Part shown: in pieces, positions 8,007 through 63,043 of the stretch
How positions within the stretch are numbered: the stretch's first letter is position 1
Layout: each line of letters begins with the position of its first letter
Source: Squalus acanthias
Taxonomy: Eukaryota
DNA length: 64,000 nucleotides
Direction of reading: 5' to 3'
Assembly: GCA_030390025.1 (NCBI GenBank)
Contig: JASTWF010000760.1
Coordinates: forward strand, 124,001-188,000
Notes under the pieces: model-generated
The model's input: only the letters and a program-made list of their open reading frames with translations
The model's database searches: none
What the model was told of the DNA's origin: nothing
Made by a program: the position numbers and the translations under genes

Positions 8007-11000
8007 AAGAACATAAGAACATAAGAAATAGGTGCAGGAGTAGGCCAATTGGCCCCTCGAGCCTGCTCCGCCATTCAATAAGATCATGGCTGATCTGATC
8101 CTAACCGCCAATCTACTATCACAGAACCATCTCCTGAACCCAACAGAATTGGACACACGAAATAGGAGCAGGATCAGGCTACACGGCCCCTGGGCCCGCT
8201 ACGTTACCCACAGGGCCATGACCGATCCGAACCTAGACTCATGTCCAAATTCCTGCCCGCTCCCCGTAACCTTTAATTCCCTTTACTTCTAGGAAACTGT
8301 CTATTTCTGTTTTAAATTTATGTAATGATGTAGCTTCTACAGCTTTTTGGGGCAGCATATTCCATGGACCTACCACCCTCTGAGTGAAGTAGTTCCTTCT
8401 CATCTCAGTTTTGAAAGAGCAGCCCCTTATTCTAAGACTATGCCCCCTAGTTCTAGTTTCACCCATCATCGAGAACATACTCCCCATATCCACCCGATCC
8501 AACCCCTTCACAATCTTATATGTTTCAATAAGATCGCCTCTCATTCTTCTGAACTCCAATGAGTAGAGTCCCAATCTACCCAACCTCTCCTCATATGTCC
8601 ATCCCCTCATCCCCGGGATTAACCGAGTGAACCTTCTTTGTACTGACTCGAGAGCAAGTATGTCTTTTCTTAAATATGGACACCAAAACTGTATGCAGTA
8701 TTCCAGGTGCGGTCTCACCAATACCTTGTACAACTGAAGCAATACCTCCCTATTTTTATATTCTATCCCCCTAGCAATGAAAGCCAACATTCCATTGGCC
8801 TTCTTAATCACTTGCTGCACCTGCATACTAACCTTTTGAGTTTCGTGCACCAGGACCCCCAGATCCCTTTGTACTTCAGTACTTTCCAGTTTCTTGCCAT
8901 TAAGATAATAACTTGCTCTACTATTTTTCCTGCCAAAGTGCATAACCTCACACTTTCCTGTATTGTATTCCATCTGCCAAATCTCTGCCCACTTACTTAG
9001 CCTGTCTATGTCCCCTTGCAGATTTTGTATGTCCTCCTCACTCACTACTTTCCCTCCCATCTTAGTATCATCTGCAAACTTTGATATGATACACTCAGTC
9101 CCCTCCTCCAAATCGTTAATATAGATTGTAAAGAGTTGGGATCCCAGCACTGACCCCTGCGGAACACCACTAGTTACTTATTGCCAGTCTGAGAATGAAC
9201 CATTTATCCCAACTCTCTGCCTTCTGTTAGATAGCCAATCCTCTATCCATGCCAGAATATTACCCCCAATCCCGTGATTTTTTATCTTAAGCAATAATCT
9301 TTTGTGTGGCACCTTGTCAAATGCCTTTTGGAAGTCTAAATACACCACATCCACTGGTTCCCCTTTATCCACCCTGTATGTTACTTCCTCAAAGAACTCC
9401 AGCAAATTTGTCAAACATGACTTCCCCTTCATAAAACCATGCTGACTTTGTCCTATTAAATTATGATTATCCAAATGTCCCGTTACTGTCTCTTTAATAA
9501 TGGACTCCAAAATGTTACCTACCACAGATGTTAGGCTAACCGGTCTATAGTTTCCAGCCTTCTGTCTACTGCCCTTTTTAAATAAGGGTGTTACATTAGC
9601 AGTTTTCCAGTCTGCCGGGATCTTTGCTGAGTCCAGGGAGTTTTGGAAAATTATTACCAATGCATCCACAATCCCTACCGCCACCTCCCTCAAGACCCAT
9701 AGGATGTAAGCCATCAGGTCCAGGTGATTTATCCGCCTTGAGTCCCATTATTTTACCGAGTACCACTTCCTTAGTGATTTTGATCGTGTTTAGCTCCTCC
9801 CCCCCTATAGCCCCCTGTTTGTCCACTGTTGGGATATTCTTAGTGTCCTCTACTGTAAAGACTGATACAAAATATTCATTCAGTGCATCTGCCATCTCCA
9901 TATTTCCCACCATTAATTTCCCGGTCCCATCCTCCAAGGGACCAACGTTTACTTTAGCCACCCTTTTTCTTTTTATATAATTATAAAAACTCTTACTATC
10001 TGTTTTTATATTTTTTGCGAATTTACTTTCATAATCTATCTTACATTTCTTAATCAATCTTTTAGTTATTCTTTGCTGTCTTTTAAAGTTTTCCAAATCC
10101 TCTATCCTCCCACTAGATTTGGCTACCTTATATGCCCTTGTTTTCATTCGAATACTATCCTTAATTTCTTTACCTAGCCACGGATGACTGTCTTTTCTTT
10201 TACACCCTTTTCTTCTCAGTGGAATATATTTTTTTTGGAAGTTGTAAAATGACTCCTTAAATGTACACCACTGATCATGTATCGTCTTACCCTTTAATCT
10301 ATTTTCCCAATCCACTCTACGTAATTCTGCTCGCATACCTTCATAGTCTCCTTTATTCAAGCTTAGCACGCTTGTTTGAGATCCAACCTTCTCACCCTCT
10401 AATTGAATATGGAATTCAACCATGTTATCGTCACTCATTCCAAGGGGATCCTTTACTAGGACATTTTTAATTAATCCTGTCTCGTTACACAGGACCAGAT
10501 CTAATGTTGCTTGCCCCCTGGTCGGCTCAGTTGCATACTGCTCAAGAAACCCATCCCTAATACACTCAATGAACTCATCCTCAAGGCAGCCCTGCCCAAT
10601 TTGATTTGTCCAATTAATATCATAGTTAAAATCCCCCATAATTATAGATGTTCCCTTACTACAAGCCTCAACTATTTCCTGATTGATACTCCGTCCAACA
10701 GATTTGCAACTGTTCGGAGGCCTATAGACTACGCCCACTAGTGTTTTTTCCCCTTATTATTCCTTATCTCCACCCAAACTGTTTCATTATCCTGATCTTT
10801 TGACCTAATATCATTTCTCTGTATTACAGTGATTCCTTCCTTTATTAACATAGCCACCCCACCTCCCCTTCCTTCCTGCCTGTCCCTCCTGATCGTTAAA
10901 TAACCTGGTATGTTTAATTCCCAGGCATTGTCACCCTGCAGCCATGTTTCTGTAATGGCCACAAGATCATACCCATATGTAGTTATTTGTGCCATTAACT

Positions 11001-12966
11001 CATCTATTTTGTTACGAATGCTACGTGCATTCAGATAGAGAACTTTCAAATATGTTTTGTGACACTTAGTTCCTGCTTTTGTCCTTTTTATTACTTTACC
11101 TTTTACTCCATACCTTCTGCCCCTTCCTGACACACACTCTGGTTTTTAATTTCTCCACTGCTACCTAAGTCTATGACCTTCTCTGTTGTCATTTTTATTA
11201 TTTGCTCTCTAGGAACCTCCCCCCCCCTAGTTAGTTTAAAGCCCTCTCTACAGCCCTAGTTATATGATCCGCCAGGACTCTAGTCCCAGCACTGGCCAAG
11301 TGAAGCCCCTCCCAACGGAACAGCTCCCTCCTGCCCCAGTACTGGTGCCAGTGTCCCAGGAAACAAAACCCATTTCTCCCACACCAGTCTTTGAGCCACT
11401 CATTTAACTCTCTAATTTTATTTGTCCTAGTCAAATTCGCTCGTGGCTCAGGTAATAATCCAGAGATTATTACCCTTGAGGTTCTGTTTTTTAATTTGAC
11501 CCCTAGCTGCTCATACTCCTTTAACAGAACCGGCTTCCTTGTCCTATCTACGTCGTTTGTACCAACATGGACCACGACAACTGGATCCACCCCCTCCCAC
11601 TGCAAGTTTCTTTCCAGCCCAGAGGAGATGTCCTTAACCCTGGCACCGGGCAGGCAACACAGCCTACAGGAATCTCGCTCTCGGCTGCAGAGAACTCTAT
11701 CTATCCCCCTAATAATACTATCCCCTACCACTACAACATTTCTATTTACTCCCCCCTCTTGAATGGCCCCCCGTTCCACGGTGCTGTGGCCAGGTTGCTC
11801 ATCCTCCCTGCAGTCCCTGCTCCCGTCCCCACAGGGAGTAAGAACCTCGAACCTGTTGGACAAGAGCAAGGGCTGCGGCTCCTCCAACACTACCTCCTGG
11901 AACCCCGTACCTGCCTCACTCGTAGTCACACCGTCCTGTCCCTGACCATGGGCTACATCTGAATTAATTAACTTCATAGGTGAGACCACCTCCTGAAACA
12001 CAGAGTCCAGGTACTTCTCCCCCTCCCTGATGTGTCGCAGTGTCTGAAGCTCAGACTCCAGCTCATCAACACGGAGCTGGAGTTCCTGTAGCAGCATACA
12101 CTTGTCACAGATGTAATCACCGTGGGCCTCAATGGGGTCCACTGGCTCCCACATCTTGCAACAGTAACACATCACCTGCTCCATTCTTTGTAATTAATTA
12201 AATTTTTTACTGTTAGTTATGGACACTCTCTGCCCGATTATAGATGCTAGTATCCTCTCTAATCAATTGGATTTAAATTAAATCAATCCCTCTAAATTAC
12301 ACCAGTTAAATGGTTTACCAACAGTCACTCTGCACCAGAAAGGCCATATTAACTACAACCCACAGAGTTTAAGTTTAAAAGAGAGAAATACTCACCAACC
12401 AATTACTTACCTGCTTTCTGGTGACGTCACACCTCGATTATTTTTACCTCTCTCCCTCCTTCCGAGTTCGGAGACTGGTCCCGCCTTACCAGGTCTCTGG
12501 AGCCTTTTAAACCCTCTGCCGCCGCCTCGCCTCACGCAGGTCCGCCGCCGCACCAGGAAGCTGACAAAGATGGAAAAAGGAAGGCACACCTCCCTCCCCG
12601 AACTCCCTCACTCACCAAACTCACAGCTTAGCACTCTGATTCAATCTGCACTCCGTGGCAAACTGCACTCTAGTCTCCCTTATTTATACTGCTGAGATTT
12701 AAATAAGTGAGCTCTCTGGCAGTTACAGAACCAGATTACACCAGTTAATTAATTAATTACTATCACCTGCTCTCCAGCACAGAGCTTGCTTAGCCCTGCC
12801 CAAGCCTGGAAGAAACTTAAAACTTGAAACAGTAAATTTAAATGCTAATTGCAAGCACACAAGACTAGAATTTATAAAAAAATTAAAAGTAAGAGATTGA
12901 CCTTTAAGATTTTCTCCCTCACTCACCAAACTCACAGCTTAGCACTCTGATTCAATCTGCACTCCG
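8007..12966 (-). mobile_element. Near full-length CR1 LINE (ORF1 intact, ORF2 broken)
   Basis: ORF1 11231-12184; APE/RT ORF2 split into 11133-10738, 10738-9596, 9714-9178 and 9150-8239 (FADD motif); (ATGTTCTT)n tail at 8007-8030; 45-bp duplication in the 5' UTR. Confidence 0.92.
11231..12184 (-). CDS. CR1 ORF1p: Cys-rich finger, coiled coil, SGNH-type esterase
   Basis: CYCC...CDKC, LQELQLRVDELESEL, VVGDSI, HVGTND, GLHL motifs. Confidence 0.85.
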   Translation of the reverse strand: MEQVMCYCCKMWEPVDPIEAHGDYICDKCMLLQELQLRVDELESELQTLRHIREGEKYLDSVFQEVVSPMKLINSDVAHGQGQDGVTTSEAGTGFQEVVLEEPQPLLLSNRFEVLTPCGDGSRDCREDEQPGHSTVERGAIQEGGVNRNVVVVGDSIIRGIDRVLCSRERDSCRLCCLPGARVKDISSGLERNLQWEGVDPVVVVHVGTNDVDRTRKPVLLKEYEQLGVKLKNRTSRVIISGLLPEPRANLTRTNKIRELNEWLKDWCGRNGFCFLGHWHQYWGRRELFRWEGLHLASAGTRVLADHITRAVERALN

Positions 12967-44504: not shown

Positions 44505-46981
44505 TGATTGAGTTTTTTGATGAGGTAACAGAGAGGGTTGATGAGGGCAATGTGGTTAACGTGGTGTACATGGATTTCCAAAAGGCGTTCGACAAGTGCC
44601 ATATAAGAGGCTTGCCAGCAAAATTGAAGCCCATGGAATAAAAGGGACAATGGCAGCATGGATACGAAATTGGCTAAGTGACAGAAAACAGAGAGTAGTG
44701 GTGAACGGTTGTTTTTCGGACTGGAGGAAGGTACACAGTGGTGTTCCCCAGGTGTCGGTACTCGGACCACTGCTTTACTTGATATATATTAATGACTTGG
44801 GTGTACAGGACACAATTTCAAAATTTGCAGATGACACAAAACTTGGAAGTACAGTGAACAGTGAGGAGGATAGTGATAGACTTCAAGAAGACATAGACAG
44901 GCTGGTGGAATGGGTGGACACGTGGCAGATGAAATTTAATGCAGAAAAGTTCAAAGTAACACATTTTGGTAGGAAGAACGAGGAGAGGCAATATAAACTA
45001 AAGGGTACAATTCTAAAGTGGGTGCATGAACAGAGAGACCTGGGGGTATGTGTGCACAAATCGTTGAAGGTGGCAGGGCAGGTTGAGAAAGGGGTTAAAA
45101 TAGCTTCCAGGATCCTGGGCTTTATAAATAGAGGCATAGAGTCCAAAAGCAAGGAAGTTATGATGAACCTTTATAACATAAGAACATAAGAACATAAGAA
45201 ATAGGAGCAGGAGTAGGCCAATCGGCCCCTCGAGCCTGCTCCGCCATTCAATAAGATCATGGCTGATCTGATCCTAACCGCCAATCTACTATCTATCACA
45301 GAACCATCTCCTGCATCTAACAGAATTGCACACACGAAATAGGAGCAGAATCAGGCTACACGGTCCCTGGGCCCGCTCCACTACCCACAGGGCCATGACC
45401 GATCCGAACCTAGACTCATGTCCAAATTCCTGCCCGCTCCCCGTAACCCTTAATGCCCTTTACTTCTAGGAAACTGTCAATTTCTGTTTTAAATTTATTT
45501 AATGATGTAGCTTCTACAGCTTTTTGTGGCAGCATATTCCATGGACCTACCACCCTCTGAGTGAAGTAGTTCCTCCTCATCTCAGTTTTGAAAGAGCAGC
45601 CCCTTATTCTAAGACTATGTCCCCTAGTTCTAGTCTCACCTGTCATCGGGAACATCCTCCCCGCATCCACCCGGTCCAACCCCTTCACAATCTTATATGT
45701 TTCAATAAGATCGCCTCTCATTCTTCTGAACTCCAATGAGTAGAGTCCCAATCTACCCAACCTCTCCTCATATGACCACCCCCTCATCCCCGGGATTAAC
45801 CGAGTGAACCTTTTTTGCACTGCCTTGAGAGCAAGGATGTCTTTCCTTAAGTAAGGACACCAAAACTGTATGCAGTATTCCAGGTGCGGTCTCACCAATA
45901 CCTTGTACAACTGAAGCAATACCTCCCTATTTTTATATTCTATCCCCCTAGCAATGAAAGCCAACATTCCATTTGCCTTCTTAATCACTTGCTGCACCTG
46001 CATACTAACCTTTTGAGTTTCGTGCACCAGGACCCCCAGATCCCTTTGCACTTCAGTACTCTCCAGTTTCTTGCCATTAAGATAATAAATTGCTCTAGGA
46101 TTTTTCCTGCCAAAGTGCATCACCTCACACTTTCCAGTGTTGTATTCCATCTGCCAAATCTCTGCCCACTTACTTAGCCTGTCTATGTCCCCTTGCAGGT
46201 TTTTTATGTCCTCCTCACTCACCACTTTCCCTCCCATCTTTGTATCATCTGCAAATTTTGATATGTTACACTTGGTCCCTTCCTCCAAATCGTTAATATA
46301 GATTGTAAAGAGTTGGGGACCCAGCACTGACCCCTGTGGAACACCACTAGTTACTGATTGCCAGTCTGAGAATGAACCATTTATCCCAACTCTTTGCTTT
46401 CTGTTAGATAGCCAATCCTCTGGTTCGGCCTCAACTGGAGTATTGTGTCCAATTCTGGGCACCGCACTTTATGAAGGATGTGAAGGGCTTAGAGAGGGTG
46501 CAGAAAAGATTTACAAGAATGGTTCCAGGGATGAGGGACTTCAGTTACGTGGATAGACTGGAGAAGCTGGGGTTGTTCTCCATAGAGCAGAGAGGTTGAG
46601 AGGAGATTTGACAGAGGTGTTCAAAATCACGAGGGGTCGGGACAGAGTAGATTGAGAGAAACTGTTCCCATTGGCGGAAGGGTTGAGAACCAGAGGACAC
46701 AGATTTAAGGTGATTGGCAGAAGAACCAAAGGCGACATGAGGAAAAACTTTTTTACGCAGCGAGTGGTTAGGATCTGGAATGCACTGCCTGAAAGGGTGG
46801 TGGAGGCAGATTCAATCACGGCTTTCAAAAGGGAATTGGATAAGTACCTGAAAGAAAAAATTTGCAGGGCTACGGGGAAAGGGCGGGGAGTGGGACTAGC
46901 TGAAGTGATCTTGCAGAGAGCCGGCACGGGCTCGACGGGCTAAATGGCCTCCTTCTGTGCTGTAACCATTCTATGATTCTA
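44505..46981 (+). mobile_element. CR1 LINE (44505-45175 and 46421-46981) interrupted by a nested CR1
   Basis: Outer RT reads ...VMMNLY and resumes LVRPQLEYCVQFW after the insert; tail ttctatgattctat. Confidence 0.85.
45176..46420 (-). mobile_element. Nested 5'-truncated CR1, same subfamily as the copy at 8007
   Basis: RT ORF 45416-46420 and 3' UTR nearly identical to 8007-9240. Confidence 0.9.
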
Positions 46982-48261: not shown

Positions 48262-48771
48262 TGTTTCTCTCTCCACAGATGCTGCCTGACCTGCTGAGTG
48301 TTTCCAGCATTTTCTGTTTTTATTAAAGAAACGAGGGAGTGATTGCTGACGGGAAGAATGTTGGGTCGTCCTGCGCATGCGCACCTCCCTGGCAGCTGAG
48401 GCGAAACACCGACTCGCCCCCACCTGAGCCGCGCACACGTACCAGATGTTGCGGCTCCACATGCGCGCCCGATGTTCCAACCGCGGGGTTTTGTGCGCTG
48501 AGCATGCGCGTTGTGGACCGATCAGGACAGGCGATTGTGGAGCAGGAGGGAGCGCGCGGGGGCCATGAGCACATGGGCGGGACTCAGAGTCAACAGAGCG
48601 CTTTCTGGAGCGCCGGGGCTTGTGGGTATTACAGCCGCCATTACTGCTGATCCTTTCAACCAACCTGTGCAGCAGCTGGAGCCTGAAAATCAGCTTCACT
48701 GCCCCTAGGTTCGGAAAGGGGAAAATTAAACAACATTTTGCCTCTGATCCTTCTCTGAACTCATTTTACAG

Positions 48772-49768
48772 GATTATAGAAGTGGAGCAGTTACAGGCGG
48801 GAAGCTCAGACCAAACATCACGTCAAGATCTGACAGAGTCGCTCGATTCATCAGGACCTGAATATCATCGGCCTTTGCACATGGAAGGAGAAAGCAGCGA
48901 TCGCAGCGATGACAAACCGCACACGTGTTCGGTGTGTGGACGCGGATTCAGCCGATCGCCTGACCTGGTGAGACACGTGCACCGTCACACCGGGGAGAAA
49001 CCGGGTAAAGGTGGGGACGGTGGGAAGGGATTCAGTTCCCCGTCTGCAATAGAAGTTCAACGGCACAGTCACACCAGGGACAGTCCGTTCACCTGCTCCG
49101 TGTGTGGAAAGGGATTTGTTTGTTCATCCCACCTGGAAACACACCAGCGAGTTCACACTGACGAGAGACCATTTCAGTGTTCTGACTGTGGGAAGAGCTT
49201 TAAAAGCCCCGGGGAGCTGAAGCGACACCAGCGAGTTCACACCGATGAGCGACCGTTTAAATGTTCTGACTGTGGGAAGACCTTTAAAAGCTCCGGGGAT
49301 CTGAAGCAACACCAGCTTGTTCACACTGCGGAGAGGCCGTTTACATGTTCTGACTGTGGGAAGAGCTTTAAAAGTTCCGGGGATCTGAAGGGACACCAAC
49401 ACCTACACACTGCGGAGAGGCCGTTCACCTGCTCCGAGTGTGGGAAGGGATTCACTCAGTCATCCAACCTGCAGAGACACCAGCGCCTCCACACTGGGGA
49501 GAGGATATTCATCTGCTCCGAATGTGGGAAGGCATTCACTCAGTATTCCACCCTGCAGACACATCAGCGAGTTCACACTGACGAGAGACCCTTTAAATGT
49601 TCTGATTGTGGGAAGAGATTTAAAAGCTCCGGGGAGCTCAAGAGACACCAACACCTACACACTGGCGAGAGGCCGTTCACCTGCTCCGAGTGTGGGAAGG
49701 GATTCGCTCGGTCCTCCAACCTGCTGGCACATCAGCGAGTTCACACTGGGGAGAACCCCTTTAAATGA
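48772..49768 (+). CDS. C2H2 zinc-finger gene ZNF-D (9 intact and 1 degenerate finger; final finger lost to a TGT>TGA stop)
   Basis: Acceptor ttttacag at 48764-48771; ATG (MEG) at 48881; tandem fingers. Confidence 0.82.
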
Positions 49769-49824
49769 TCTGACTGTGCGAAGAGCTTTAAAAGTTTATG
49801 GGACACCAGCGTCTTCACACTGAT

Positions 49825-50682
49825 CATCGAATCTAACAGCACAGAAGGAGGTGATTCGGCCAATCGTGTCTGTGCTGGCTCTTTGAAAGAACTGTCCAAT
49901 TTAGTCCCAAACCCCAGCTTTATCCCCAGAACTCTGCAAACTAGTCCTCTTCAAGTACACGTCCAATCACCGTTTGAAAGTTCCTGTGGAACCTGATTCC
50001 AGCATCCTTTCAGATGGTGTGTTCCAGATCTTAACAACCCTCTGTGTGAAAACAATTCTCCTCAGTTCACCTCTAGTTCTTTTAGCAACTATTTTAAATC
50101 TGTGACCTTTGGTTACCGACCCACTTGCCAGAGTGAACAGTTTCTCCCTACTTGCTCGATCAAAACCCCTCATCATTTTGAACACCTCTATTAGGTCTCC
50201 TCTTAACCTTCTCTGCTCTAAGGGGAACAATCCCAGCTTCTCCAATCTCTCCACATAACTGAAGTCCCTCATCCCTGGTACCATCCTGGTCAACCTCCTC
50301 TGCACCCTCTCCAAGGCCTTGACATCCTTCCTAAAGTGTGGTGCCCGGAACTGTACACAAGACTCCAGCTGAGGCCAAAACCCTGCAGCTGTACAAAACC
50401 CTGGTTAGACCACACCTGGAGTACTGTGAGCAGTTCTGGGCACCACACCTTAGGAAGGATATATTGGCCTTGGAGGGAGTGCAGCGCAGGTTTACCAGAA
50501 TGATACCCGGACTTCAAGGGTTAAGTTACGGGGAGAGATTACACAAATTAGGGTTGTGTTCCCTGGAATTTAGAAGGTTAAGGGTTGATCTGATCGAAGT
50601 TTTCAGGATATTAAGGGGAACAGATAGGGTAGATAGAGAGAAACTATTTCCGCTGGTTGGGGATTCTAGGACTCGGGGCATA
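49825..50682. mobile_element. Two older CR1 3' fragments in opposite orientations (minus, then plus), duplicated at 55715-56850
   Basis: RT C-terminal ORFs 49967-50314 (-) and ~50375-50682 (+). Confidence 0.8.
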
Positions 50683-53600
50683 TTGGAGGGGGAGGGCGAA
50701 CAGCCAGCTGTCGTGGTGCACATAGGCACCAACGATATAGGTAAAAAAGGGGATGAGGTCCTAAAAGCAGAATACAGGGAGTTAGGAGTTAAATTAAAAA
50801 AGAGGACCTCAAAGGTAGTAATCTCAGGATTGCTACCAGTGCCACGTGCTAGTCAGAGTAGAAATAGGAGGATACTTCAAATGAATACGTGGCTAGAGGA
50901 ATGGTGCAAGGGGGAGGGATTCAAATTCCTGGGACATTGGAACCGGTTCTGGGGGAGGTGGGACCAGTACAAACCGGACGGTCTGCACCTGGGCAGGGCC
51001 GGGACCGCTGTCCTAGGGAGAGTGTTTGCTAGTGCTGTTGGGGAGGATTTAAACTAATGTGGCAGGGGGTTGGGAACCTGAGCAGGGAGACAGAGGAAAG
51101 CATGTCAGGAAAGGACAGAAGGTATGGAGTAAAAGGTAAAGTCTTAAATAAGGAAAAAGCAGGAAGTAAGTGTCGCAAAACACATTTGAAAGTTCTTTAT
51201 CTGAACGCACGTAGCATTCGTAACAAAATTGAAGAGTTAACGGCACAAATAACTATGTATGGGTATGATCTTGTGGCCATTACAGAAACATGGCTTCAGG
51301 GTGAAAACGTCTGGGAATTAAATATGCCAGGGTATTTAACAATCAGGAAGGACAGGCAGGAAGGAAGGGGAGGAGGGGTGGCTATGTTAATAAAGGAAGG
51401 AATCACTGTAATACAGAGAAATGATATTGGGTCAAAAGATCAGGATAATGAAACAGTTTGGGTAGAGATTAGGAATAATAAGGGGAAAAAAACACTGGTG
51501 GGCGTAGTATATAGGCCTCCTAATAGTTGCAACTCTGTTGGAAGAAGTATTAATCAGGAAATAGTTGGGGCATGTAATAAGGGAACAGCTATAATTATGG
51601 GGGATTTTAACTATAATATTAACTGGACAAATCAAATTGGGCAGGGCAGCCTTGAGGAAGAGTTTATTGAGTGCCTTAGGGATGGATTTCTTGAGCAGTA
51701 TGTAACTGATCCTACAAGGGGGCAAGCAACCTTGGACCTGGTACTGTGTAATGAGTCTGGATTAATTAATAATGTCCTAGTTAAGGATCCCCTTGGAATG
51801 AGTGACCATAACATGGTTGAATTCCATATCCAATTAGAGGGTGAGAAGGTTGGTTCTCAAACAAGCATACTGAGCTTGAATAAAGGAGACTATGATGGCA
51901 TGAGAGCAGAATTGATTAAAGTGGACTGGGAAAATAGATTAAAGTGTAAGACGGTACATGAGCAGTGGTGTTCATTCAAGGAGTTATTTTACAACTTTCA
52001 AAATAAATATATTCCACTGAGGAAAAAAGGGTGTAAAAGAAATGACAGCCATCCATGGCTAAGTAAAGAAATTAAAGAAAGTATCCAACTAAAAACAAGG
52101 ACATATAAGGTAGCCAAAGTTAGTGGGAGGATAGAAGATTGGGAAGTCTTCAAAAGACAACAAAAAGTAACTAAAGGATTGATTAAGAAAGGGAAAATAG
52201 ACTATGAAAATAAATTAGCAAAAAATATAAAAACAGATAGCAAGAGTTTCTATAGTTATATAAAAAGAAAAAGGGTGGTTAAGGCAAACGTAGGTCCCTT
52301 AGAGGATGAGACCGGGAAATTAATGGTGGGAAACATGGAGATGGCAAAAATGCTGAACAAATATTTTGTTTCAGTCTTTACGGTAGAGGACACTAAGAAT
52401 ATCCCAACACTGGACAAACAGGGGGCTCTAGTGGGGGAGGAGCTAAATACGATTAAAATTACTAAGGAATTGGTACTCAGTAAAATAATGGGACTCAAGG
52501 CGGATAAATCCCCTGGACCTGATGGCTTACATCCTAGGGTCTTGAGGGAAGTGGCAGTAGGAATTGTGGATGCTTTGGTAATAATTTTCCAAAACTCCCT
52601 GAACTCAGCAAAGGTCCTGGCAGATTGGAAAACTGCTAATGTAACACCCTTATTTAAAAAGGGTTGTAGGCAGAAGGCTGGGAATTATAGACCAGTTAGC
52701 CTAACATCTGTGGTGGGTAAAATTTTGGAGTCTATTATTAAGGAGACAGTAACGGAACATTTAGATAAACATAATTTAATAGGACAAAGTCAGCATGGCT
52801 TTATGAAGGGGAAGTCATGTCTGACAAATTTGCTCGAGTTCTTTGAGGACATAACGTACAGGGTGGATAAAGGGGAACCAGTGGATGTAGTGTATTTAGA
52901 CTTCCAGAAGGCATTCGACAAGGTGCCACATAAAAGATTATTACTTAAGATAAAAAATCACTGGATTGGGGGTAATATTCTGGCATGGGTGGAGGATTGG
53001 TTATCTAACAGGAAGCAGAGAGTTGGGATAAATGGTTCATTCTCGGACTGGCAACCAGTAGCCAGTGGTGTTCCGCAGGGGTCGGTGCTGGGTCCCCAAC
53101 TCTTTACAATCTATATTAATGATTTGGAGGAGGGGACCGAGTGTAACATATCAAAGTTTGCAGATGATACAAAGATGGGAGGGAAAGTAGAGAGTGAGGA
53201 GGACATAAAAAACCTACAAGGGGATATAGACAGGCTGGGTGAGTGGGCAGAGATTTGGCAGATGCAATACAATATTGGAAAATGTGAGGTTATACACTTT
53301 GGCAGGAAAAATCAGAGAGCAAGTTATTATCTTAATGGCGAGAAACTGGAAAGTACTGCAGTACAAAGGGATCTGGGGGTCTTGGTGCAAGAAAATCAAA
53401 AAGTTAGTATGCAGGTGCAGCAGGTGATCAAGAAAGCCAATGGAATGTTGGCTTTTATTGCTAGGGGGATAGAATATCAAAACAGGGAGGTATTGCTGCA
53501 GTTGTATAGGGTATTGGTGAGACCGCACCTGGAGTACTGCATACAGTTTTGGTGTCCATACTTAAGAAAAGACATACTTGCTCTCGAGGCAGTACAAAGA

Positions 53601-54192
53601 AGGTCCACTCGGTTAATTCCGGGGATGAGGGAGTGGACATACGAGGAGAGGTTGAGTAGATTGGGACTCTACTCATTGGAGTTCAGAAGAATGAGAGGCG
53701 ATCTTATTGAAACATCTCAGATTGTGAAGGGGCTTGATCGGGTGGACGCGGTGAGGATGTTCCCAATGATGGGTGAAACTAGAACTAGGGGACATAATCT
53801 TAGAATAAGGGGCTCCTCTTTCAAAACTGAGATGAGGAGAAACTTTTTCACTCAGAGGGTAGTGGGTCTGTGGAATTTGCTACCCCAGGAAGCTGTGGAA
53901 GCTACTTCATTAAATAAATTTAAAACAGAAATAGACCGTTTCCTAGAAGTAAAGGGAATTAGGGGTTACGGGGAGCGGGCTGGAAATTGGACATGAGGCT
54001 GAGTTCGGATCGGTCGAGGCCCTGGGGGTGGCGGAGCGGGCCCAGGGGCTGAGTGGCCTGGTCCTGCTCCTACTTCTTGTGTTCTTTAGATTTGAGGTTG
54101 GATCAGATCAGCCATGATATTATTGAATGGCGGAGCAGGCTCGAGGGGCCGATTGGTCTACTCCTGCTCCTATTTCTTATGTTCTTATGTTC
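50683..54192 (+). mobile_element. Young CR1 LINE, 5'-truncated in ORF1, with intact ORF2
   Basis: ORF1 esterase tail (HIGTND, DGLHL), 979-aa ORF2, 3' stem-loop and (ATGTTCTT)n tail. Confidence 0.95.
51057..53996 (+). CDS. CR1 ORF2p: APE endonuclease plus reverse transcriptase
   Basis: YLNARS, ITETW, GDFN, SDH endonuclease motifs; QGSVLGP and FADD RT motifs; no stops. Confidence 0.95.
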   Translation: MWQGVGNLSRETEESMSGKDRRYGVKGKVLNKEKAGSKCRKTHLKVLYLNARSIRNKIEELTAQITMYGYDLVAITETWLQGENVWELNMPGYLTIRKDRQEGRGGGVAMLIKEGITVIQRNDIGSKDQDNETVWVEIRNNKGKKTLVGVVYRPPNSCNSVGRSINQEIVGACNKGTAIIMGDFNYNINWTNQIGQGSLEEEFIECLRDGFLEQYVTDPTRGQATLDLVLCNESGLINNVLVKDPLGMSDHNMVEFHIQLEGEKVGSQTSILSLNKGDYDGMRAELIKVDWENRLKCKTVHEQWCSFKELFYNFQNKYIPLRKKGCKRNDSHPWLSKEIKESIQLKTRTYKVAKVSGRIEDWEVFKRQQKVTKGLIKKGKIDYENKLAKNIKTDSKSFYSYIKRKRVVKANVGPLEDETGKLMVGNMEMAKMLNKYFVSVFTVEDTKNIPTLDKQGALVGEELNTIKITKELVLSKIMGLKADKSPGPDGLHPRVLREVAVGIVDALVIIFQNSLNSAKVLADWKTANVTPLFKKGCRQKAGNYRPVSLTSVVGKILESIIKETVTEHLDKHNLIGQSQHGFMKGKSCLTNLLEFFEDITYRVDKGEPVDVVYLDFQKAFDKVPHKRLLLKIKNHWIGGNILAWVEDWLSNRKQRVGINGSFSDWQPVASGVPQGSVLGPQLFTIYINDLEEGTECNISKFADDTKMGGKVESEEDIKNLQGDIDRLGEWAEIWQMQYNIGKCEVIHFGRKNQRASYYLNGEKLESTAVQRDLGVLVQENQKVSMQVQQVIKKANGMLAFIARGIEYQNREVLLQLYRVLVRPHLEYCIQFWCPYLRKDILALEAVQRRSTRLIPGMREWTYEERLSRLGLYSLEFRRMRGDLIETSQIVKGLDRVDAVRMFPMMGETRTRGHNLRIRGSSFKTEMRRNFFTQRVVGLWNLLPQEAVEATSLNKFKTEIDRFLEVKGIRGYGERAGNWT

Positions 54193-54595
54193 CAACCGCG
54201 GGGTTTTGTGCGCTGAGCCTGCGCGTTGCGGACCGATCGGGACGGGCGATTGTGGAGCAGGAGGGAGAGCGTGGGGGCCATGAGCACATGGGCGGGACTC
54301 AGAGTCAACAGAGCACTTTCTGGAGCGCTGGGGCTTGTGGGTATTGCAGCTGCCATTACTGCTGATCCCTTCAACCAACCTGTGCAGCAGCTGGAGCCTG
54401 AAAATCAGCTTCACTGCCCCTAGGTTCGGAAAGGGGAAAATTAAACAACAGTTTGCCTCTGACCCTTTTCTGAATTTGATTTACATGGTTATAGAAGTGG
54501 AGCAGTTACAGGCGGGAAGCTCAGACCAAACATCACGTCAAGATCTGACAGAGTCGCTCGATTCATCCGGACCTGAATATCATCGGCCTTTGCAC

Positions 54596-55728
54596 ATGGA
54601 AGGAGAAAGCAGCGATCGCAGCGATGACAAACCGCACACGTGTTCGGTGTGTGGACGCGGATTCAGCCGATCGCCTGACCTGGCGAGACACGTGCACCGT
54701 CACACCGGGGAGAAACCGGCTAAAGGTGGGGACGGTGGTAGGGATTCAGTTCCCCGTCTGCAATAGAAGTTCAACGGCGCAGTCACACCAGGGACAGTCC
54801 GTTCACCTGCTCCGTGTGTGGAAAGGGATTTGTTTGTTCATCCCACCTGCAAACACACCAGCGAGTTCACACTGATGAGAGACCATTTCAACGTTCTGAC
54901 TGTGGGAAGCGTTTTAAAAGCTCCGGGGATCTGAAGGGACACCAGCGAGTTCACACTGTGGAGAGGCCATTCACCTGCTGTGTGTGTGGGAAGGGATTCT
55001 TGCAGTCCTCCATCCTGCTGACACACCAGCTTGTTCACACTGACGAGAGACCCTTTAAATCTTCTGAGTGTGGGAAGAGCTTTAAAATCCCCCGGGAGCT
55101 CAAGCGACACCAGCGAGTTCACACTGGAGAGAGGCCGTTCACCTGCTTTGTGTGTGGGAAGGGATTCACTCAGTCATCCAACCTGCAGAGACACCAGCGC
55201 CTCCACACTGGGGAGACGATATTCATCTGCTCCGAATGTGGGAAGGGATTCACTGAGTCATCCACCTTGCAGACACACCAGCTTGTTCACACTGACGAGA
55301 GACCCTTTAAATGTTCTGACTGTGGGAAGAGCTTTAAAAGCTCCGGGGAGCTGAAGAGACACCAACACCTACACACTGGGGAGAGGCCGTTCACCTGCTC
55401 TGTGTGTGGGAAGGGATTCGCTCGGTCCTCCAACCTGCTGGTACATCAGCGAGTTCACACTGGAGAGAACCCCTTTAAATGTTCTGACTGTGGGAGAAGC
55501 TTTAAAAGCTCTGGGGAGCTGAAGAGACACCTGCTCCTCCACACTGGCGAGAGGCCGTTCACCTGCTCCATGTGTGGGAAAGGATTCACTGAGTCATCCA
55601 CCCTCCTGTCACACCAGCTTGTTCACACTGACGAGAGACCCTTTAAATGTTCTGACTGTGGGAAGAGCTTTAAAAGCTCTAAGAGCCTTAAGAGACACCA
55701 GCGTCTTCACACTGATCATAGAATCTAA
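54596..55728 (+). pseudogene. ZNF-E, frameshifted duplicate of ZNF-D (13 finger units)
   Basis: 1-bp deletion at ~54739 relative to ZNF-D; acceptor AG>AT at ~54486; two fingers have lost a Cys. Confidence 0.82.
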
Positions 55729-56854
55729 CAGCACAGAAGGAGGTGATTCGGTCCATCGTGTCCGTGCCGGCTCTTTGAAAGAGCTGTCCAATTTAGTCCC
55801 AAACCCCAGCTTTATCCCCAGATCTCTGCAAACTAGTCCTCTTCAAGTACACGTCCAATCACCGTTTGAAAGTTCCTGTGGAACCTGATTCCAGCATCCT
55901 TTCAGATGGTGCGTTCCAGATCTTAACAACCCTCTGTGTGAAAACAATTCTCCTCATTCACCTCTAGTTCTTTTAGCAACTATTTTAAATCTGTGACCTT
56001 TGGTTACCGACCCACTTGCCAGAGTGAACAGTTTCTCCCTACTTGCTCGATCAAAACCCCTCATCATTTTGAACCCCTCTATTAGGTCTCCTCTTAACCT
56101 TCTCTGCTCTAAGGGGAACAATCCCAGCTTCTCCAATCTCTCCACATAACTGAAGTCCCTCATCCCTGGTACCATCCTGGTCAACCTCCTCTGTACCCTC
56201 TCCAAGGCCTTGACATCCTTCCTAAAGTGTGGTGCCCAGAACTGTACACAAGACTCCAGCTGAGGCCAAAACCCTGCAGCTGTACAAAACCCTGGTTAGA
56301 CCACACCTGGAGTACTGTGAGCAGTTCTGGGCACCACACCTTAGGAAGGATATATTGGCCTTGGAGGGAGTGCAGCGCAGGTTTACCAGAATGATACCCG
56401 GACTTCAAGGGTTAAGTTACGGGGAGAGATTACACAAATTAGGGTTGTATTCCCTAGAATTTAGAAGGTTAAGGGGTGATCTGATCGAAGTTTTCAGGAT
56501 ATTAAGGGGAACAGATAGGGTAGATAGAGAGAAACTATTTCCGCTGGTTGGGGATTCTAGGACTCGGGGCATAGTCTAAAAATTAGAGCCAGACCTTTCA
56601 GGAGTGAAATTAGGAAACACTTCTACACACAAAGGGTGGTAGAAGTTTGGAACTCTCTTCCGCAAACGGCAATTGATGCGAGATCAATTGTTAATTTTAA
56701 ATCTGAGATTGATAGGTTTTTGTTACCCAAAGGTATTAAGGGATATGGGCCAAAGGCGGGTATATGGAGTTAGGTCACAGATCAGCCATGATCTCATTGA
56801 ATGGCGGAACAGGCTCGAGGGGCTGAATGGCCTCCTCCTGTCCTATGTTCCTAA

Positions 56855-60963: not shown

Positions 60964-61674
60964 TAAGCTTCAAGTAAACTGCTTTCAAACAGAAAACCTG
61001 AAACCTTCCCAACAAAACAATTAAATACCAGTTCTACACCAGTCCTATTGGCAATCCATTAACTCATATCATTTGATGTTGTCGAACCATGTAAAGTCAT
61101 AGTCCTTGTCCACAGTCTTCAGCCCTTCCACGGAAAAAGAAGCCATCCACTTCCTGAAATCCCGTAAAAAGACCGAACCCTCAAATCTTCTTCTGCTTGC
61201 TGTTATCGCTCACAGGACCCAACCATCAAAGAATACTCATCATTCCTCACCGATATTACTTTGCTTGGTTTTTACTTTCCTTTTATTTTCCGTCTTTTAA
61301 CCATTCACATTTTCCATCTTGTAACCGCTCACGCGCCACATTACAGATGGAAACAGTTTGTCTTTCCTCCACCAATATGGCGTCGCATAAACCGGTCCCA
61401 TGACCAAGAAAAAGCCTCACAGCTGCCGCCGGACAGAGCACATGCTGGGCCGCTGGAACTCATTCAGGCCCGAGACCATTCTGCAACTTTTAGAACCAGT
61501 GCAGCAATGCTCACCAACCGCATCTCCCGACTCCACCTCTGCCGACCAGCCACTCCACCCTGAGTCCACCGCCTGGGGCTCTCCGTGCTGGGTCTCCCGC
61601 TCAGGCCACTCTCCTCTGGATCTTCCACACTGGGCCCTACGCCCCGGCCCCTCTGTGCTGGAGTTCCCCACGAG

Positions 61675-63043
61675 CAGCTGGGCCTCTCGCTATCGCCCCG
61701 GCCTCTCTGCACTGGCAGCTGGGCCTCTCGCTATCGCCCTGGCCCCTCCACACTGGCAGCTGGGCCTCTCGCTATCGCCCCGGCCCCTCTGCACTGGCAG
61801 CTGGGCCGCTCGCTATCGCCCCGGCCCCTCTGCACTGGCAGCTGGGCCTCTCGCTATTACCCCGGCCCCTCTGCACTGGCAGCTGGGCCTCTCGCTATGG
61901 CCCCGGCCCCTCCGCACTGGCAGCTGGGCCTCTCGCTATCGCCTCGGCCCCTCCGCACTGGCAGCTGGGCCTCTCGCTATGGCCCCGGCCCCTCCGCACT
62001 GGCAGCTGGGCCTCTTGCTATTACCCCGGCCCCTCTGCACTGGCAGCTGGGCCTCTCGCTATCGCCCCGGCCCCTCTGCACGGGCAGCTGGGCCTCTCGC
62101 TATCGCCCCGGCCCCTCCGCACTGGCAGCTGGGCCTCTTGCTATCGCCCCGGCCCCTCCGCACTGGCAGCTGGGCCTCTCGCTATCGCCCTGGCCCCTCT
62201 GCACGGGCAGCTGGGCCTCTCGCTATGGCCCCGGCCCCTCCGCACTGGCAGCTGGGCCTCTCGCTATCGCCCCGGCCCCTCTGCACGGGCAGCTGGACCT
62301 CTCGCTATCGCCCCGGCCCCTCCGCACTGGCAGCTGGGCCTCTCGCTATCGCCCCGGCCCCTCCGCACTGGCCGCTGGGCCTCTCGCTATCGCCCCGGCC
62401 CCTCCGCACTGGCAGCTGGGCCTCTCGCTATCGCCCCGGCCCCTCCGCACTGGCAGCTGGGCCTCTCGCTTTCGCCCCGGCCCCTCCGCACTGGCAGCTG
62501 GGCTTCTCGCTTTCGCCCCGGCCCCTCCGCACCGGCAGCTGGGCCTCTCGCTGTCGCCCCGGCCCCTCCGCACCGGCAGCTGGGCCTCTCGCTGTCGCCC
62601 CGGCCCCTCCGCACTGACAGCTGGGCCTCTCGCTGTCGCCCCGGCCCCTCCGCACTGACAGCTGGGCCTCTCGCTGTCGCCCCGGCCCCTCCGCACTGGC
62701 AGCTGGGCCTCTCGCTATCGCCCCGGCCCCTCCGCACTGGCAGCTGGGCCTCTCGCTGTCGCCCCGGCCCCTCCGCACTGGCAGCTGGGCCTCTCGCTGT
62801 CGCCCCGGCCCCTCCGCACTGGCAGCTGGGCCTCTCGCTGTCGCCCCGGCCCCTCCGCACTGGCAGCTGGGCCTCTCGCTGTCGCCCCGGCCCCTCCGCA
62901 CTGGCAGCTGGGCCTCTCGCTGTCGCCCCGGCCCCTCCGCACTGGCAGCTGGGCCTCTCGCTATCGCCCCGGCCCCTCCGCACTGGCAGCTGGGCCTCTC
63001 GCTATCGCCCCGGCCCCTCCGCACTGGCAGCTGGGCCTCTCGC
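61675..63043. repeat. 41-bp GC-rich minisatellite, ~33 copies
   Basis: Unit ggcagctgggcctctcgctatcgccccggcccctccgcact. Confidence 0.96.

What the first reader, a model, noticed from the sequence alone, without database searches (positions are those of the whole stretch)
48472..56573. CR1 insertion flanked by a ~2.2-kb direct repeat that duplicated a zinc-finger gene (giant TSD?)
Seen: 48472-50682 and 54187-56573 are direct copies that abut the CR1 (50683-54192) exactly. At the 3' junction the CR1 tail (ATGTTCTT)n overlaps the first bases of the duplicate (ATGTTC microhomology). At the 5' junction an older CR1 fragment is cut at ACTCGGGGCATA in the left copy but continues intact to its own tail in the right copy. 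Known: target-primed reverse transcription makes TSDs from staggered nicks, usually only a few to tens of bp. Inference: a distant second-strand nick produced a kb-scale TSD and so created ZNF-E. This would be a direct route by which LINEs expand tandem ZNF clusters.
Basis: partly seen in the sequence, partly recalled or inferred. Interest (0 to 1): 0.85.

Follow-up and report, generated by a model that had tools for sequence, protein, structure and literature searches.

The report
Young CR1 between two zinc-finger copies
A very young CR1 jumping gene sits exactly between two copies of a zinc-finger gene, which looks like a giant insertion footprint, but the two copies seem older than the insertion, so the jumping gene probably did not make the duplicate.

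Summary
48472-50682 and 54187-56573 are direct copies lying flush against a 5'-truncated CR1-like LINE (50683-54192). Its tail shares ATGTTC with the start of the repeat. An older CR1 fragment is cut at 50682 in the left copy and runs on past 56573 in the right one.

The interpretation as a 2.2-kb target-site duplication is not established. A CR1 insertion that removed the spacer between two ZNF units already lying head to tail gives the same flush topology.

The CR1 differs from its family's commonest letters at only 7-16 of 3510 positions, has lost 0-1 of 52 CpGs and keeps a 979-aa ORF2. The repeats differ at 34 of 1295 non-array positions, including 11 CpG transitions. Only the 751 bases beside the CR1 (7 differences) fit equal ages.

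My odds: later arrival about 0.45, giant TSD about 0.30.

Kilobase-scale LINE duplications are already known for L1 and Dualen. No read evidence for the junctions was obtained. The scan holds one more note on this stretch (s1-888540); two look-ups by words (the second showed 8 of 113 notes) showed no similar case elsewhere.

The parts
48472..50682 (+). Left repeat (unit A): 5' CpG-rich region, ZNF-D exon, 3' region with two older CR1 fragments
48620..49768 (+). ZNF-D open frame (382 aa, 10 fingers, then TGA at 49766-49768 where E has TGT). A lacks 178 bases present in E at 49794/49795.
49967..50314 (-). Older CR1 3' fragment, inverted, present in both repeats (right copy about 55858-56205)
   Evidence: minus-strand ORF with a CR1 C-terminal-like translation; I3, I6
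50402..50682 (+). Older CR1 3' fragment, cut at ..ACTCGGGGCATA by the young CR1
50683..54192 (+). Young 5'-truncated CR1-like LINE (c1)
50683..51057 (+). Remnant of CR1 ORF1 (GDSL esterase, profile positions 63-177 of 178)
   Evidence: longer ORF1 in copy c2
51057..53996 (+). Open CR1 ORF2, 979 aa, endonuclease plus reverse transcriptase
54132..54192 (+). CR1 3' hairpin (GGAGCAGG..CCTGCTCC) and 8-base microsatellite tail (TTCTTATG)n
54187..54192 (+). ATGTTC shared by the CR1 tail and the start of the repeat (same letters at 48472-48477)
54187..56573 (+). Right repeat (unit A'): same layout as A, with two more fingers
54335..55728 (+). ZNF-E, split into two open frames (54335-54766 and 54814-55728) by a 1-base loss near 54737-54739
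56293..56851 (+). Older CR1 3' fragment, uninterrupted across 56573/56574, to its own hairpin and tail

Best explanation
Two units of one ZNF gene family (D and E) already lay head to tail and had already diverged. A member of a very young, very abundant CR1 subfamily then integrated by target-primed reverse transcription. Its microsatellite tail was primed at an ATGTTC just upstream of unit E. Its cDNA stopped inside ORF1, and that 5' end was joined inside an old CR1 fragment downstream of unit D. The spacer between the two points (the rest of D's old CR1 fragment plus E's upstream region) was lost. What remains on the two sides of the CR1 is the part that both units share, so it looks like a 2.2-kb target-site duplication.

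Shown: the anatomy, the CR1 identity, the youth of the CR1 and the greater divergence of the repeats. Inferred: the former spacer and its loss.
For: 1. Geometry (my reasoning). Replacing the DNA between point p of one unit and point q of the next, with q before p, leaves flush repeats q..p. The topology is therefore not diagnostic.

2. The CR1 is very young. One search lists 28 of its 3510 positions with another letter in >=10% of the laid depth. At 7 of the 28 the other letter holds >=90% in both runs of organism A. At 10 it holds >50% in both, and at 16 it holds >50% in at least one. None of the 7 is a CpG loss and one of the 10 is (51867), out of 52 CpGs. No indel reaches more than about a sixth of the depth. 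ORF2 is open over 979 aa.

3. The repeats are older. They differ at 21/444 (5' part), 13/851 (3' part) and 95/914 plus 179 gap columns (array). There are 11 CpG transitions in about 86 CpG-lineages, 6 in D and 5 in E. Equal-age tests give: non-array P <= 2e-4; 3' part P = 0.003-0.12; CpG Fisher P = 0.004-0.02.

4. D and E are not simple sisters in the 5' part. At 54219 and 54229 95-100% of the depth in organism A carries D's letters, yet D's letters at 54239 and 54244 are not listed. A third sequence type therefore exists. D's CpG letters at 54272, 54315 and 54329 are not listed either.

5. Differences in the matching fingers carry the mark of constraint: pS 0.095, pN 0.031, P = 0.008 against neutrality. 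They are therefore not fresh decay of a dead copy.

6. For L1, 1-10 kb deletions at the insertion site are reported as the commonest structural outcome and 1-10 kb duplications as rarer (passages of 10.1101/2024.12.14.628481).

7. Another CR1 copy here (45182-46420) has no TSD.
Against: - It needs a coincidence: the insertion's deletion must span the junction of a two-copy tandem pair. By my rough count this is rarer genome-wide than a LINE-made duplication, unless kb-scale TSDs are very rare for CR1.
- D/E is the only young ZNF pair in the window (the other ZNF arrays are 70-76% alike), and it is exactly the pair with the CR1 between.
- The 751 bases next to the CR1 5' end differ at only 7 positions, which fits the CR1's age (P = 0.09-0.56).
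- The lost spacer was never seen.
- The CR1 count measures distance from commonest letters in short contigs, not from a curated subfamily tree. The tool warns that contig depth is not copy number.
- Gene conversion from other family members could have added differences to D or E after a CR1-made duplication.
Confidence: 0.45

Rival explanations
1. Giant target-site duplication. The first nick was made at CCCG|ATGTTC upstream of a single ZNF unit. The second-strand break or priming end lay 2.2 kb downstream in the old CR1 fragment. [quoted passage not shown]
For: - The repeats are flush at both junctions to the base, with a tail/target microhomology of 6 bases.
- Both outer junctions are native. 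The old CR1 runs on across 56573. A contig of organism B reads an X-like 30-mer (27 of 30 letters) in front of ATGTTCC (loose ends).
- This needs one event instead of two.
- Precedents exist. TSDs over 100 bp occur in up to 10% of L1 inserts in HeLa, and extremely large ones occur in repair-deficient cells (PMC5223499 passages). 1-10 kb tandem duplications are 'regarded as large TSDs'. Dualen LINE duplications have a median length of 900 bp (PMC9977147 passages).
- The 751 bases beside the CR1 fit equal ages.
Against: - Equal age fails for the non-array repeat as a whole (P <= 2e-4) and for CpG losses (11 in about 86 CpG-lineages against 0-1 of 53; P = 0.004-0.02).
- Within 26 bases (54219-54244) D and E each carry two letters that the dominant third sequence type lacks. 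This is hard to reach in the CR1's short lifetime without several conversions.
- Finger blocks D4-D6 are rearranged, 178 bases are missing in D, and both genes carry a disabling change.
- No empty site was seen.
Confidence: 0.3
2. Composite retro-insertion. A read-through RNA from another locus (CR1, then a downstream ZNF unit, ending at the old CR1 fragment's own hairpin and tail at about 56851) was reverse transcribed into the D locus, primed at D's matching old CR1 tail. The whole of 50683-56851 would then be one insert.
For: - The right unit ends in a complete CR1-type hairpin and tail that could serve as the recognition site.
- It would explain why E is not D's sister and why the CR1 is younger than the D/E split.
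- An unchecked note of this scan reports an apparent CR1 3' transduction elsewhere in this genome.
Against: - There is no direct evidence.
- It needs an insert longer than 6 kb plus loss of about 280 bases of target.
- The old tail's stem is imperfect.
- Nothing marks A' as RNA-derived: it is colinear with A throughout.
Confidence: 0.08
3. Assembly artefact: a false join or a falsely duplicated haplotype.
For: No contig bridging 50682/50683 or 54192/54193 was among the 32 pieces listed of about 196,700 laid.
Against: - The two joints are not at homologous CR1 positions. The old fragment's position at the break corresponds to about 53795 of c1, whereas c1 starts in ORF1. An overlap-based misjoin is therefore unlikely.
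- The copies differ by 2.6% outside the arrays, by two fingers and by a rearranged block. That is more than alleles usually differ.
Confidence: 0.05

Closest known systems
L1 'large TSDs' / small (1-10 kb) L1-mediated tandem duplications in cultured cells and tumours (PMC5223499; 10.1101/2024.12.14.628481; 10.1101/179705, which reports a 22.6-Mb case). I read passages only.
   Same: A single LINE insert with its tail at one breakpoint and the same target DNA on both sides, with a duplicated length in the kb range.
   Different: Those are somatic or experimental L1 events with poly(A) tails, proved by comparison with the parental genome. Here the element is a CR1 with a microsatellite tail in a germline assembly, no parental state is known, and the repeats look older than the insert.
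L1 insertion-associated target-site deletions (1-10 kb), reported as the commonest structural outcome (10.1101/2024.12.14.628481 passages; 10.1101/179705 passages)
   Same: The best explanation uses exactly this: tail junction by TPRT, no TSD, and loss of DNA between the two joints.
   Different: The lost DNA is inferred, not seen. The look-alike repeat arises only because the deletion would lie between two paralogous units.
Dualen-4b LINE of Chlamydomonas: duplications with a median length of 900 bp flanking new insertions in mutation-accumulation lines (PMC9977147 passages)
   Same: A germline-heritable LINE insertion flanked by a long duplicated target.
   Different: Dualen carries two endonucleases, and long duplications accompany more than half of its insertions. 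Here 1 of 9 CR1 3' ends has one.
LINE 3' transduction
   Same: Flanking host DNA carried along with a LINE, as in the minor rival.
   Different: CR1 reverse transcriptase is thought to need its own 3' hairpin and microsatellite (PMC8665684 passages). A second CR1 3' end downstream would therefore be required. This was not shown here.

Membership tests
CR1-type LINE (the insert 50683-54192) | Apurinic-type endonuclease and reverse transcriptase in one ORF | tested here: met
   Exo_endo_phos 9.4e-12 (residues 49-251) and RVT_1 7.6e-30 (536-752) in the 979-aa ORF.
CR1-type LINE (the insert 50683-54192) | 3' hairpin followed by an 8-base microsatellite (criterion as given in PMC8665684 passages) | tested here: met
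   An 8-bp stem GGAGCAGG/CCTGCTCC is followed by (TTCTTATG)n. The same layout is seen in the other copies of the window. Fold energy alone is not significant (z -1.2).
CR1-type LINE (the insert 50683-54192) | ORF1 with an esterase domain (a feature of CR1-like elements; recalled, not from a call) | tested here: met
   Lipase_GDSL_2 4.2e-11, profile positions 63-177 of 178, cut at the 5' end. Copy c2 has a 317-aa ORF1.
CR1-type LINE (the insert 50683-54192) | Placement of the reverse transcriptase inside the CR1 clade in a tree | not tested
   No tree was built. The best database relative is 78% identical and unnamed.
LINE-made large TSD / tandem duplication | One LINE insert with the same target DNA flush on both sides and the tail at the downstream copy | tested here: met
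LINE-made large TSD / tandem duplication | Pre-insertion state with a single copy and no LINE | not testable with these tools
   No orthologue or second haplotype could be reached.
LINE-made large TSD / tandem duplication | Repeat divergence about twice the insert's own divergence since insertion | tested here: inconclusive
   Not met for the non-array repeat (P <= 2e-4) or for CpG (P = 0.004-0.02). Met for 49932-50682 (P = 0.09-0.56)..
LINE-made large TSD / tandem duplication | The two copies are each other's closest relatives | tested here: inconclusive
   One search shows a dominant third type (A,T,G,G at 54219-54244) that is neither D nor E. No family tree was possible.
LINE insertion with target-site deletion | Tail junction by TPRT, no TSD, host DNA missing between the joints | tested here: inconclusive
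   The tail junction is met. The missing DNA cannot be shown without the pre-insertion state.
C2H2 zinc-finger gene (D and E) | Tandem C2H2 fingers with H/C links | tested here: met
   zf-C2H2 1.4e-60 (D) and 7.1e-64 (E). Finger tables.

The most novel reading that the evidence does not exclude
A germline CR1 integration in a shark-like genome used a second-strand end 2.2 kb downstream of its first nick. In a single step it duplicated a complete zinc-finger gene unit. The later differences between the copies would come from gene conversion within a large, fast-evolving ZNF family. If this recurs, CR1 activity would itself seed tandem ZNF expansion.
Probability: 0.3. Interest if true: 0.55.

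Novelty: new member of a known kind. Interest (0 to 1): 0.3.

Why it matters
If the CR1 made the duplicate, this would be a natural, germline, vertebrate example of a whole gene copied by a LINE's oversized target-site duplication. So far that process is documented in the papers I found mainly in L1 cell-culture and tumour work and in a green alga. It would link LINE activity directly to the growth of ZNF clusters.

If the CR1 merely landed between two older copies, the locus is an ordinary LINE insertion with target loss. Its value is then a caution: flush repeats around a LINE inside a tandem gene family mimic a TSD and must be dated before they are read as one.

Tried and rejected
1. Unequal crossing-over in register between the old CR1 fragment and the young CR1: rejected. 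The break in the old fragment corresponds to about position 53795 of c1, whereas c1 begins in ORF1 at 50683, about 3.1 kb out of register.

2. The left copy pasted into a longer CR1: rejected. Nothing in 47000-48471 matches the ORF1 5' part of copy c2.

3. A periodic array with a 2.2-kb period: rejected. The end of X is unlike the end of A, and no third copy lies in the window.

4. Showing that X|A is native by colinearity with other ZNF genes of the window: failed. Only a 49-base and a 102-base match were found, and they are not colinear. A loose end of organism B served instead.

5. Strand-coordinated C>T / G>A changes, as expected if the repeat had been long single-stranded DNA: no such pattern in the differences listed (my reading).

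6. Close CR1 copies or ZNF orthologues from protein databases: the best ORF2 relative is 78% identical, among 765 proteins with E <= 1e-50 out of 8000 candidates scored. There was one ZNF hit at 55% identity, from Pristiophorus japonicus. Neither helps with dating or with an empty site.

7. Metagenome scan for a family-specific 31-mer: 0 matches.

8. Junction check with reads: one search lists 32 of about 196,700 pieces and none bridges a junction, so the assembly was not checked.

9. Findings look-ups showed no other CR1 with kb-scale flush repeats. One search found no note; two searches showed 8 notes each, of 113 and 88 that fitted.

10. Supplements of the papers were not opened. The TSD size tables of PMC5223499 and the duplication lists of the L1 papers may hold sizes that I could not see.
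Full report
WHAT IS THERE. The window holds a head-to-tail pair of 2.2-2.4-kb units, A (48472-50682) and A' (54187-56573), with a 3510-base insert exactly between them. The repeat finder pairs 48472-48771 with 54187-54486 (94%), 49796-50064 with 55688-55956 (96%) and 50066-50365 with 55957-56256 (99%). A self-BLAST and a global alignment with 200-base flanks end the homology at 48472/54187 and 50682/56573.

Each unit holds four parts: a CpG-rich 5' region, one large C2H2 zinc-finger exon (Pfam zf-C2H2 1.4e-60 and 7.1e-64), a short 3' region, and two older CR1 3' fragments lying head to head.

THE INSERT. 50683-54192 matches a longer, decayed copy in the window (c2, 11605-8009, minus strand) at 85.7% over 3607 columns. 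It matches a third copy (c3, 46420-45182) at 87.7%. It begins inside ORF1, where the GDSL esterase profile is matched at positions 63-177 of 178. It then carries an open ORF2 of 979 aa with endonuclease and reverse transcriptase domains. Copy c2 continues upstream into a 317-aa ORF1, so c1 is 5'-truncated.

The 3' end has an 8-bp stem followed by (TTCTTATG)n, as in the other copies of the window. That is the hairpin-plus-octamer layout used to define CR1 3' ends in birds (PMC8665684, passages). I did not build an RT tree, so 'CR1-type' rests on the domains and the 3' end.

THE JUNCTIONS. The tail reads ..TTCTTATGTTCTTATGTTC|CAACC, and the left unit starts CCCG|ATGTTCCAACC. Six bases can therefore belong either to the tail or to the target.

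At the 5' side, the old CR1 fragment of A stops at ..ACTCGGGGCATA (50682). In A' it runs on. 56293-56640 aligns colinearly with c1 53515-53863 across 56573. The frame after 56573 reads ..FRSEIRKHFYTQRVVEVWNSLP.., parallel to c1's C-terminus. The fragment ends in its own hairpin and tail at about 56851. So A'|Y is a native junction.

X|A is probably native too. Two contigs of organism B match A' from 54187 onwards and carry in front of it a 30-mer that agrees with the end of X at 27 of 30 letters (loose ends).

WHY THE TOPOLOGY DOES NOT DECIDE. X-A-insert-A'-Y is what a target-site duplication looks like. It is also what remains when an insert replaces the DNA between a point p in one unit and a point q in the next unit of a head-to-tail pair, whenever q lies before p in unit coordinates. 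The shared part q..p is then flush on both sides by construction. A LINE insertion with target-site loss between two paralogues therefore gives the same picture. So does a composite insert that carries a paralogue. Only dating, relationships or the pre-insertion state can tell these apart.

AGE OF THE CR1. I laid the short contigs of four public runs on 49795-54800 at 95% likeness or more. The runs were two samples of organism A, one of organism B and one of organism H. The CR1 is covered very densely in all four. In X1, 10,329 of 37,543 laid contigs are 99% alike or more.

Only 28 of the 3510 CR1 positions show another letter in 10% or more of the depth.
- At 7 of these 28 the other letter holds >=90% in both runs of organism A: 50875, 51143, 51233, 51374, 51615, 53294, 53478.
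- At 10 it holds >50% in both runs, adding 51058, 51867 and 52119.
- At 16 it holds >50% in at least one run.

No insertion or deletion reaches more than about a sixth of the depth. None of the 7 is a CpG loss, and one of the 10 is (51867). c1 has 52 CpGs.

Letters that c1 shares with a good part of the family cannot be changes made after insertion. The private load is therefore about 0.2%, and 0.46% is a generous ceiling. Among the 13 sites listed where at least one run of organism A shows mostly another letter, 4 changes are transitions and 9 are transversions, whereas the 3' part of the repeat shows 9 and 4. The difference is not significant (P = 0.12).

Caveats: these are contigs, weighted by word depth. 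The tool warns that this depth is not a copy number, and that contigs show presence, not absence.

AGE OF THE REPEAT. Outside the finger array the units differ at 21 of 444 positions in the 5' part and at 13 of 851 in the 3' part, with one 1-base gap. Eleven of these 34 differences are CpG transitions, 6 of them losses in D and 5 in E. That is about 11 losses in 86 CpG-lineages (the denominator is my count from its figures).

The CpG density of the 3' part (1.5 per 100 bases) equals that of c1 (1.5), so the two are comparable.

Under equal ages, with the repeat exposed on two lineages and the CR1 on one, the results are as follows.
- Non-array repeat: P <= 2e-4 for any of the three CR1 counts.
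- 3' part alone: P = 0.003, 0.016 and 0.12 for counts of 7, 10 and 16.
- CpG (Fisher): P = 0.004 (0 of 53) or 0.02 (1 of 53).
- My baseline of 13 non-CpG, non-clustered differences in 1410 bases: P = 0.05 (count 7) to 0.36 (count 13).
- The 751 bases nearest the CR1 (49932-50682, 7 differences): compatible with equal ages, P = 0.09, 0.22 and 0.56.

Divergence is thus uneven along the unit. It is 5.8% in the first 189 bases, falls in clusters at 48748-48773 and 49860-49876, and is 0.93% at the 3' end (my count from the differences listed).

RELATIONSHIP OF D AND E. At 54219 and 54229, 95-100% of the depth in both samples of organism A carries D's letters. D's letters at 54239 and 54244, only 10-25 bases away, are not listed. 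The dominant contig type is therefore neither D nor E, and further near-identical copies of this 5' region exist.

D's letters at 54268, 54272, 54315 and 54329 are not listed either, although a D-type contig over that span would pass the 95% filter. At three of these sites D has CpG where E has TpG or CpA. This suggests that E shares those states with other family members and that D belongs to another line. Because contigs drop rare variants, this is a hint and not proof.

In the arrays, fingers D1, D3 and D7-D10 match E1, E3 and E7-E10 at 90-99%. D4-D6 do not match their partners (86, 63 and 79%). D6 is closest to E9 (93%). D lacks 178 bases that hold two fingers of E.

In the six matching fingers pS is 0.095 (11 of 116.3 sites) and pN is 0.031 (12 of 387.7). 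That is an excess of silent change over the neutral expectation (P = 0.008). These differences therefore arose under constraint or were imported from constrained fingers. They are not the fresh decay of a copy born without a promoter.

Both genes are now damaged. D has TGA at 49766-49768 where E has TGT. E has lost one base near 54737-54739, and a contig of organism B has the undamaged, D-like form there.

WEIGHING. The later-arrival reading accounts for the young CR1, the older and unequal repeats and the third sequence type without special pleading. It does need the deletion to span the junction of a two-copy pair, which is a rare coincidence, and D/E is the only young ZNF pair in the window.

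The giant-TSD reading needs one event and has precedents (next section). It must explain the excess divergence by several gene conversions within the CR1's short lifetime, and it sits uneasily with 0-1 CpG losses in the CR1.

My rough prior favours the single event. My rough likelihood from the dating favours the later arrival by more than that. I put:
- later arrival: 0.45
- giant TSD: 0.30
- composite retro-insertion (CR1 plus a downstream unit ending at the old CR1 tail): 0.08
- assembly artefact: 0.05
- the rest is unassigned.

WHAT IS KNOWN. Of all these papers I read passages only.
- In HeLa cells, TSDs over 100 bp were reported never to exceed 10% of recovered L1 inserts. 'Extremely large' TSDs dominate in excision-repair-deficient cells, and the authors note that such TSDs could duplicate exons (PMC5223499).
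- Whole-genome work on L1 expression and tumours reports 1-10 kb deletions as the most frequent structural outcome. [quoted passage not shown]
- A 22.6-Mb L1-bridged tandem duplication is described in a tumour (10.1101/179705).
- In Chlamydomonas mutation-accumulation lines, more than half of Dualen LINE insertions carry flanking duplications of over 50 bp, with a median length of 900 bp (PMC9977147).

A kb-scale LINE-made duplication is thus a known kind. A CR1 case that copied a whole gene in a vertebrate germline would be a new member of it. My four literature searches showed no such CR1 case. They cover open-access texts only.

LIMITS. No read or contig evidence for the two CR1 junctions was obtained: 32 of about 196,700 pieces were listed and none bridges a junction. 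Run and organism names were coded, so how closely organisms A, B and H are related is unknown.

Noticed in passing
window 51055-51059: In c1 the ORF1 stop and the ORF2 start overlap as TAATG. At 51058, 67-91% of the laid depth in the four runs reads A, giving TAAAG, so most family copies lack this ATG. ORF2 of this family is probably not started at that codon. Other notes of the scan propose a frameshift site at the ORF1/ORF2 border.
   Followed up: no
window 8009-12184 (minus strand): A longer copy of a related CR1 subfamily (c2) has a 317-aa ORF1 and an ORF2 broken into at least four open pieces. It is 94.9% alike to c3 (45179-46421) but only 85.7% alike to c1.
   Followed up: partly
window 45182-46420 (minus strand): CR1 copy c3 sits inside an older CR1 ORF2 3' region. 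The flanks read ..EVMMNLY and VRPQLEY.., so about three codons of the host element are missing and there is no target-site duplication (my reading).
   Followed up: partly
window 54219-54244 and 54268-54329: Contigs of organism A show a dominant sequence type (A,T,G,G at 54219, 54229, 54239, 54244) that is neither ZNF-D nor ZNF-E. The 5' region of this ZNF unit therefore has further near-identical copies elsewhere in the genome.
   Followed up: partly
window 50683-54192: Most of the commonest letters of this CR1 subfamily recur in runs labelled as three different organisms (A, B, H). Of the 7 positions where c1 departs from them, 5 show the same other letter in the run of organism H; the other 2 have next to no depth there. 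The subfamily is therefore shared or very slowly evolving.
   Followed up: no
window 61640-63043: A tandem repeat with an 82-base period, with copies 92-95% alike.
   Followed up: no
window 48366-48510: Several GCGCATGCGC-like motifs lie on both sides of the repeat boundary at 48472. They resemble NRF1-type promoter sites (recalled, not tested). The right copy would then keep only part of a promoter.
   Followed up: no
window 48764-48773 versus 54479-54488: A possible splice acceptor in front of the ZNF exon (TTTTACAG|GA in D) reads TTTACATGGT in E, within a cluster of 8 differences in 26 bases. The exon structure was not tested.
   Followed up: no
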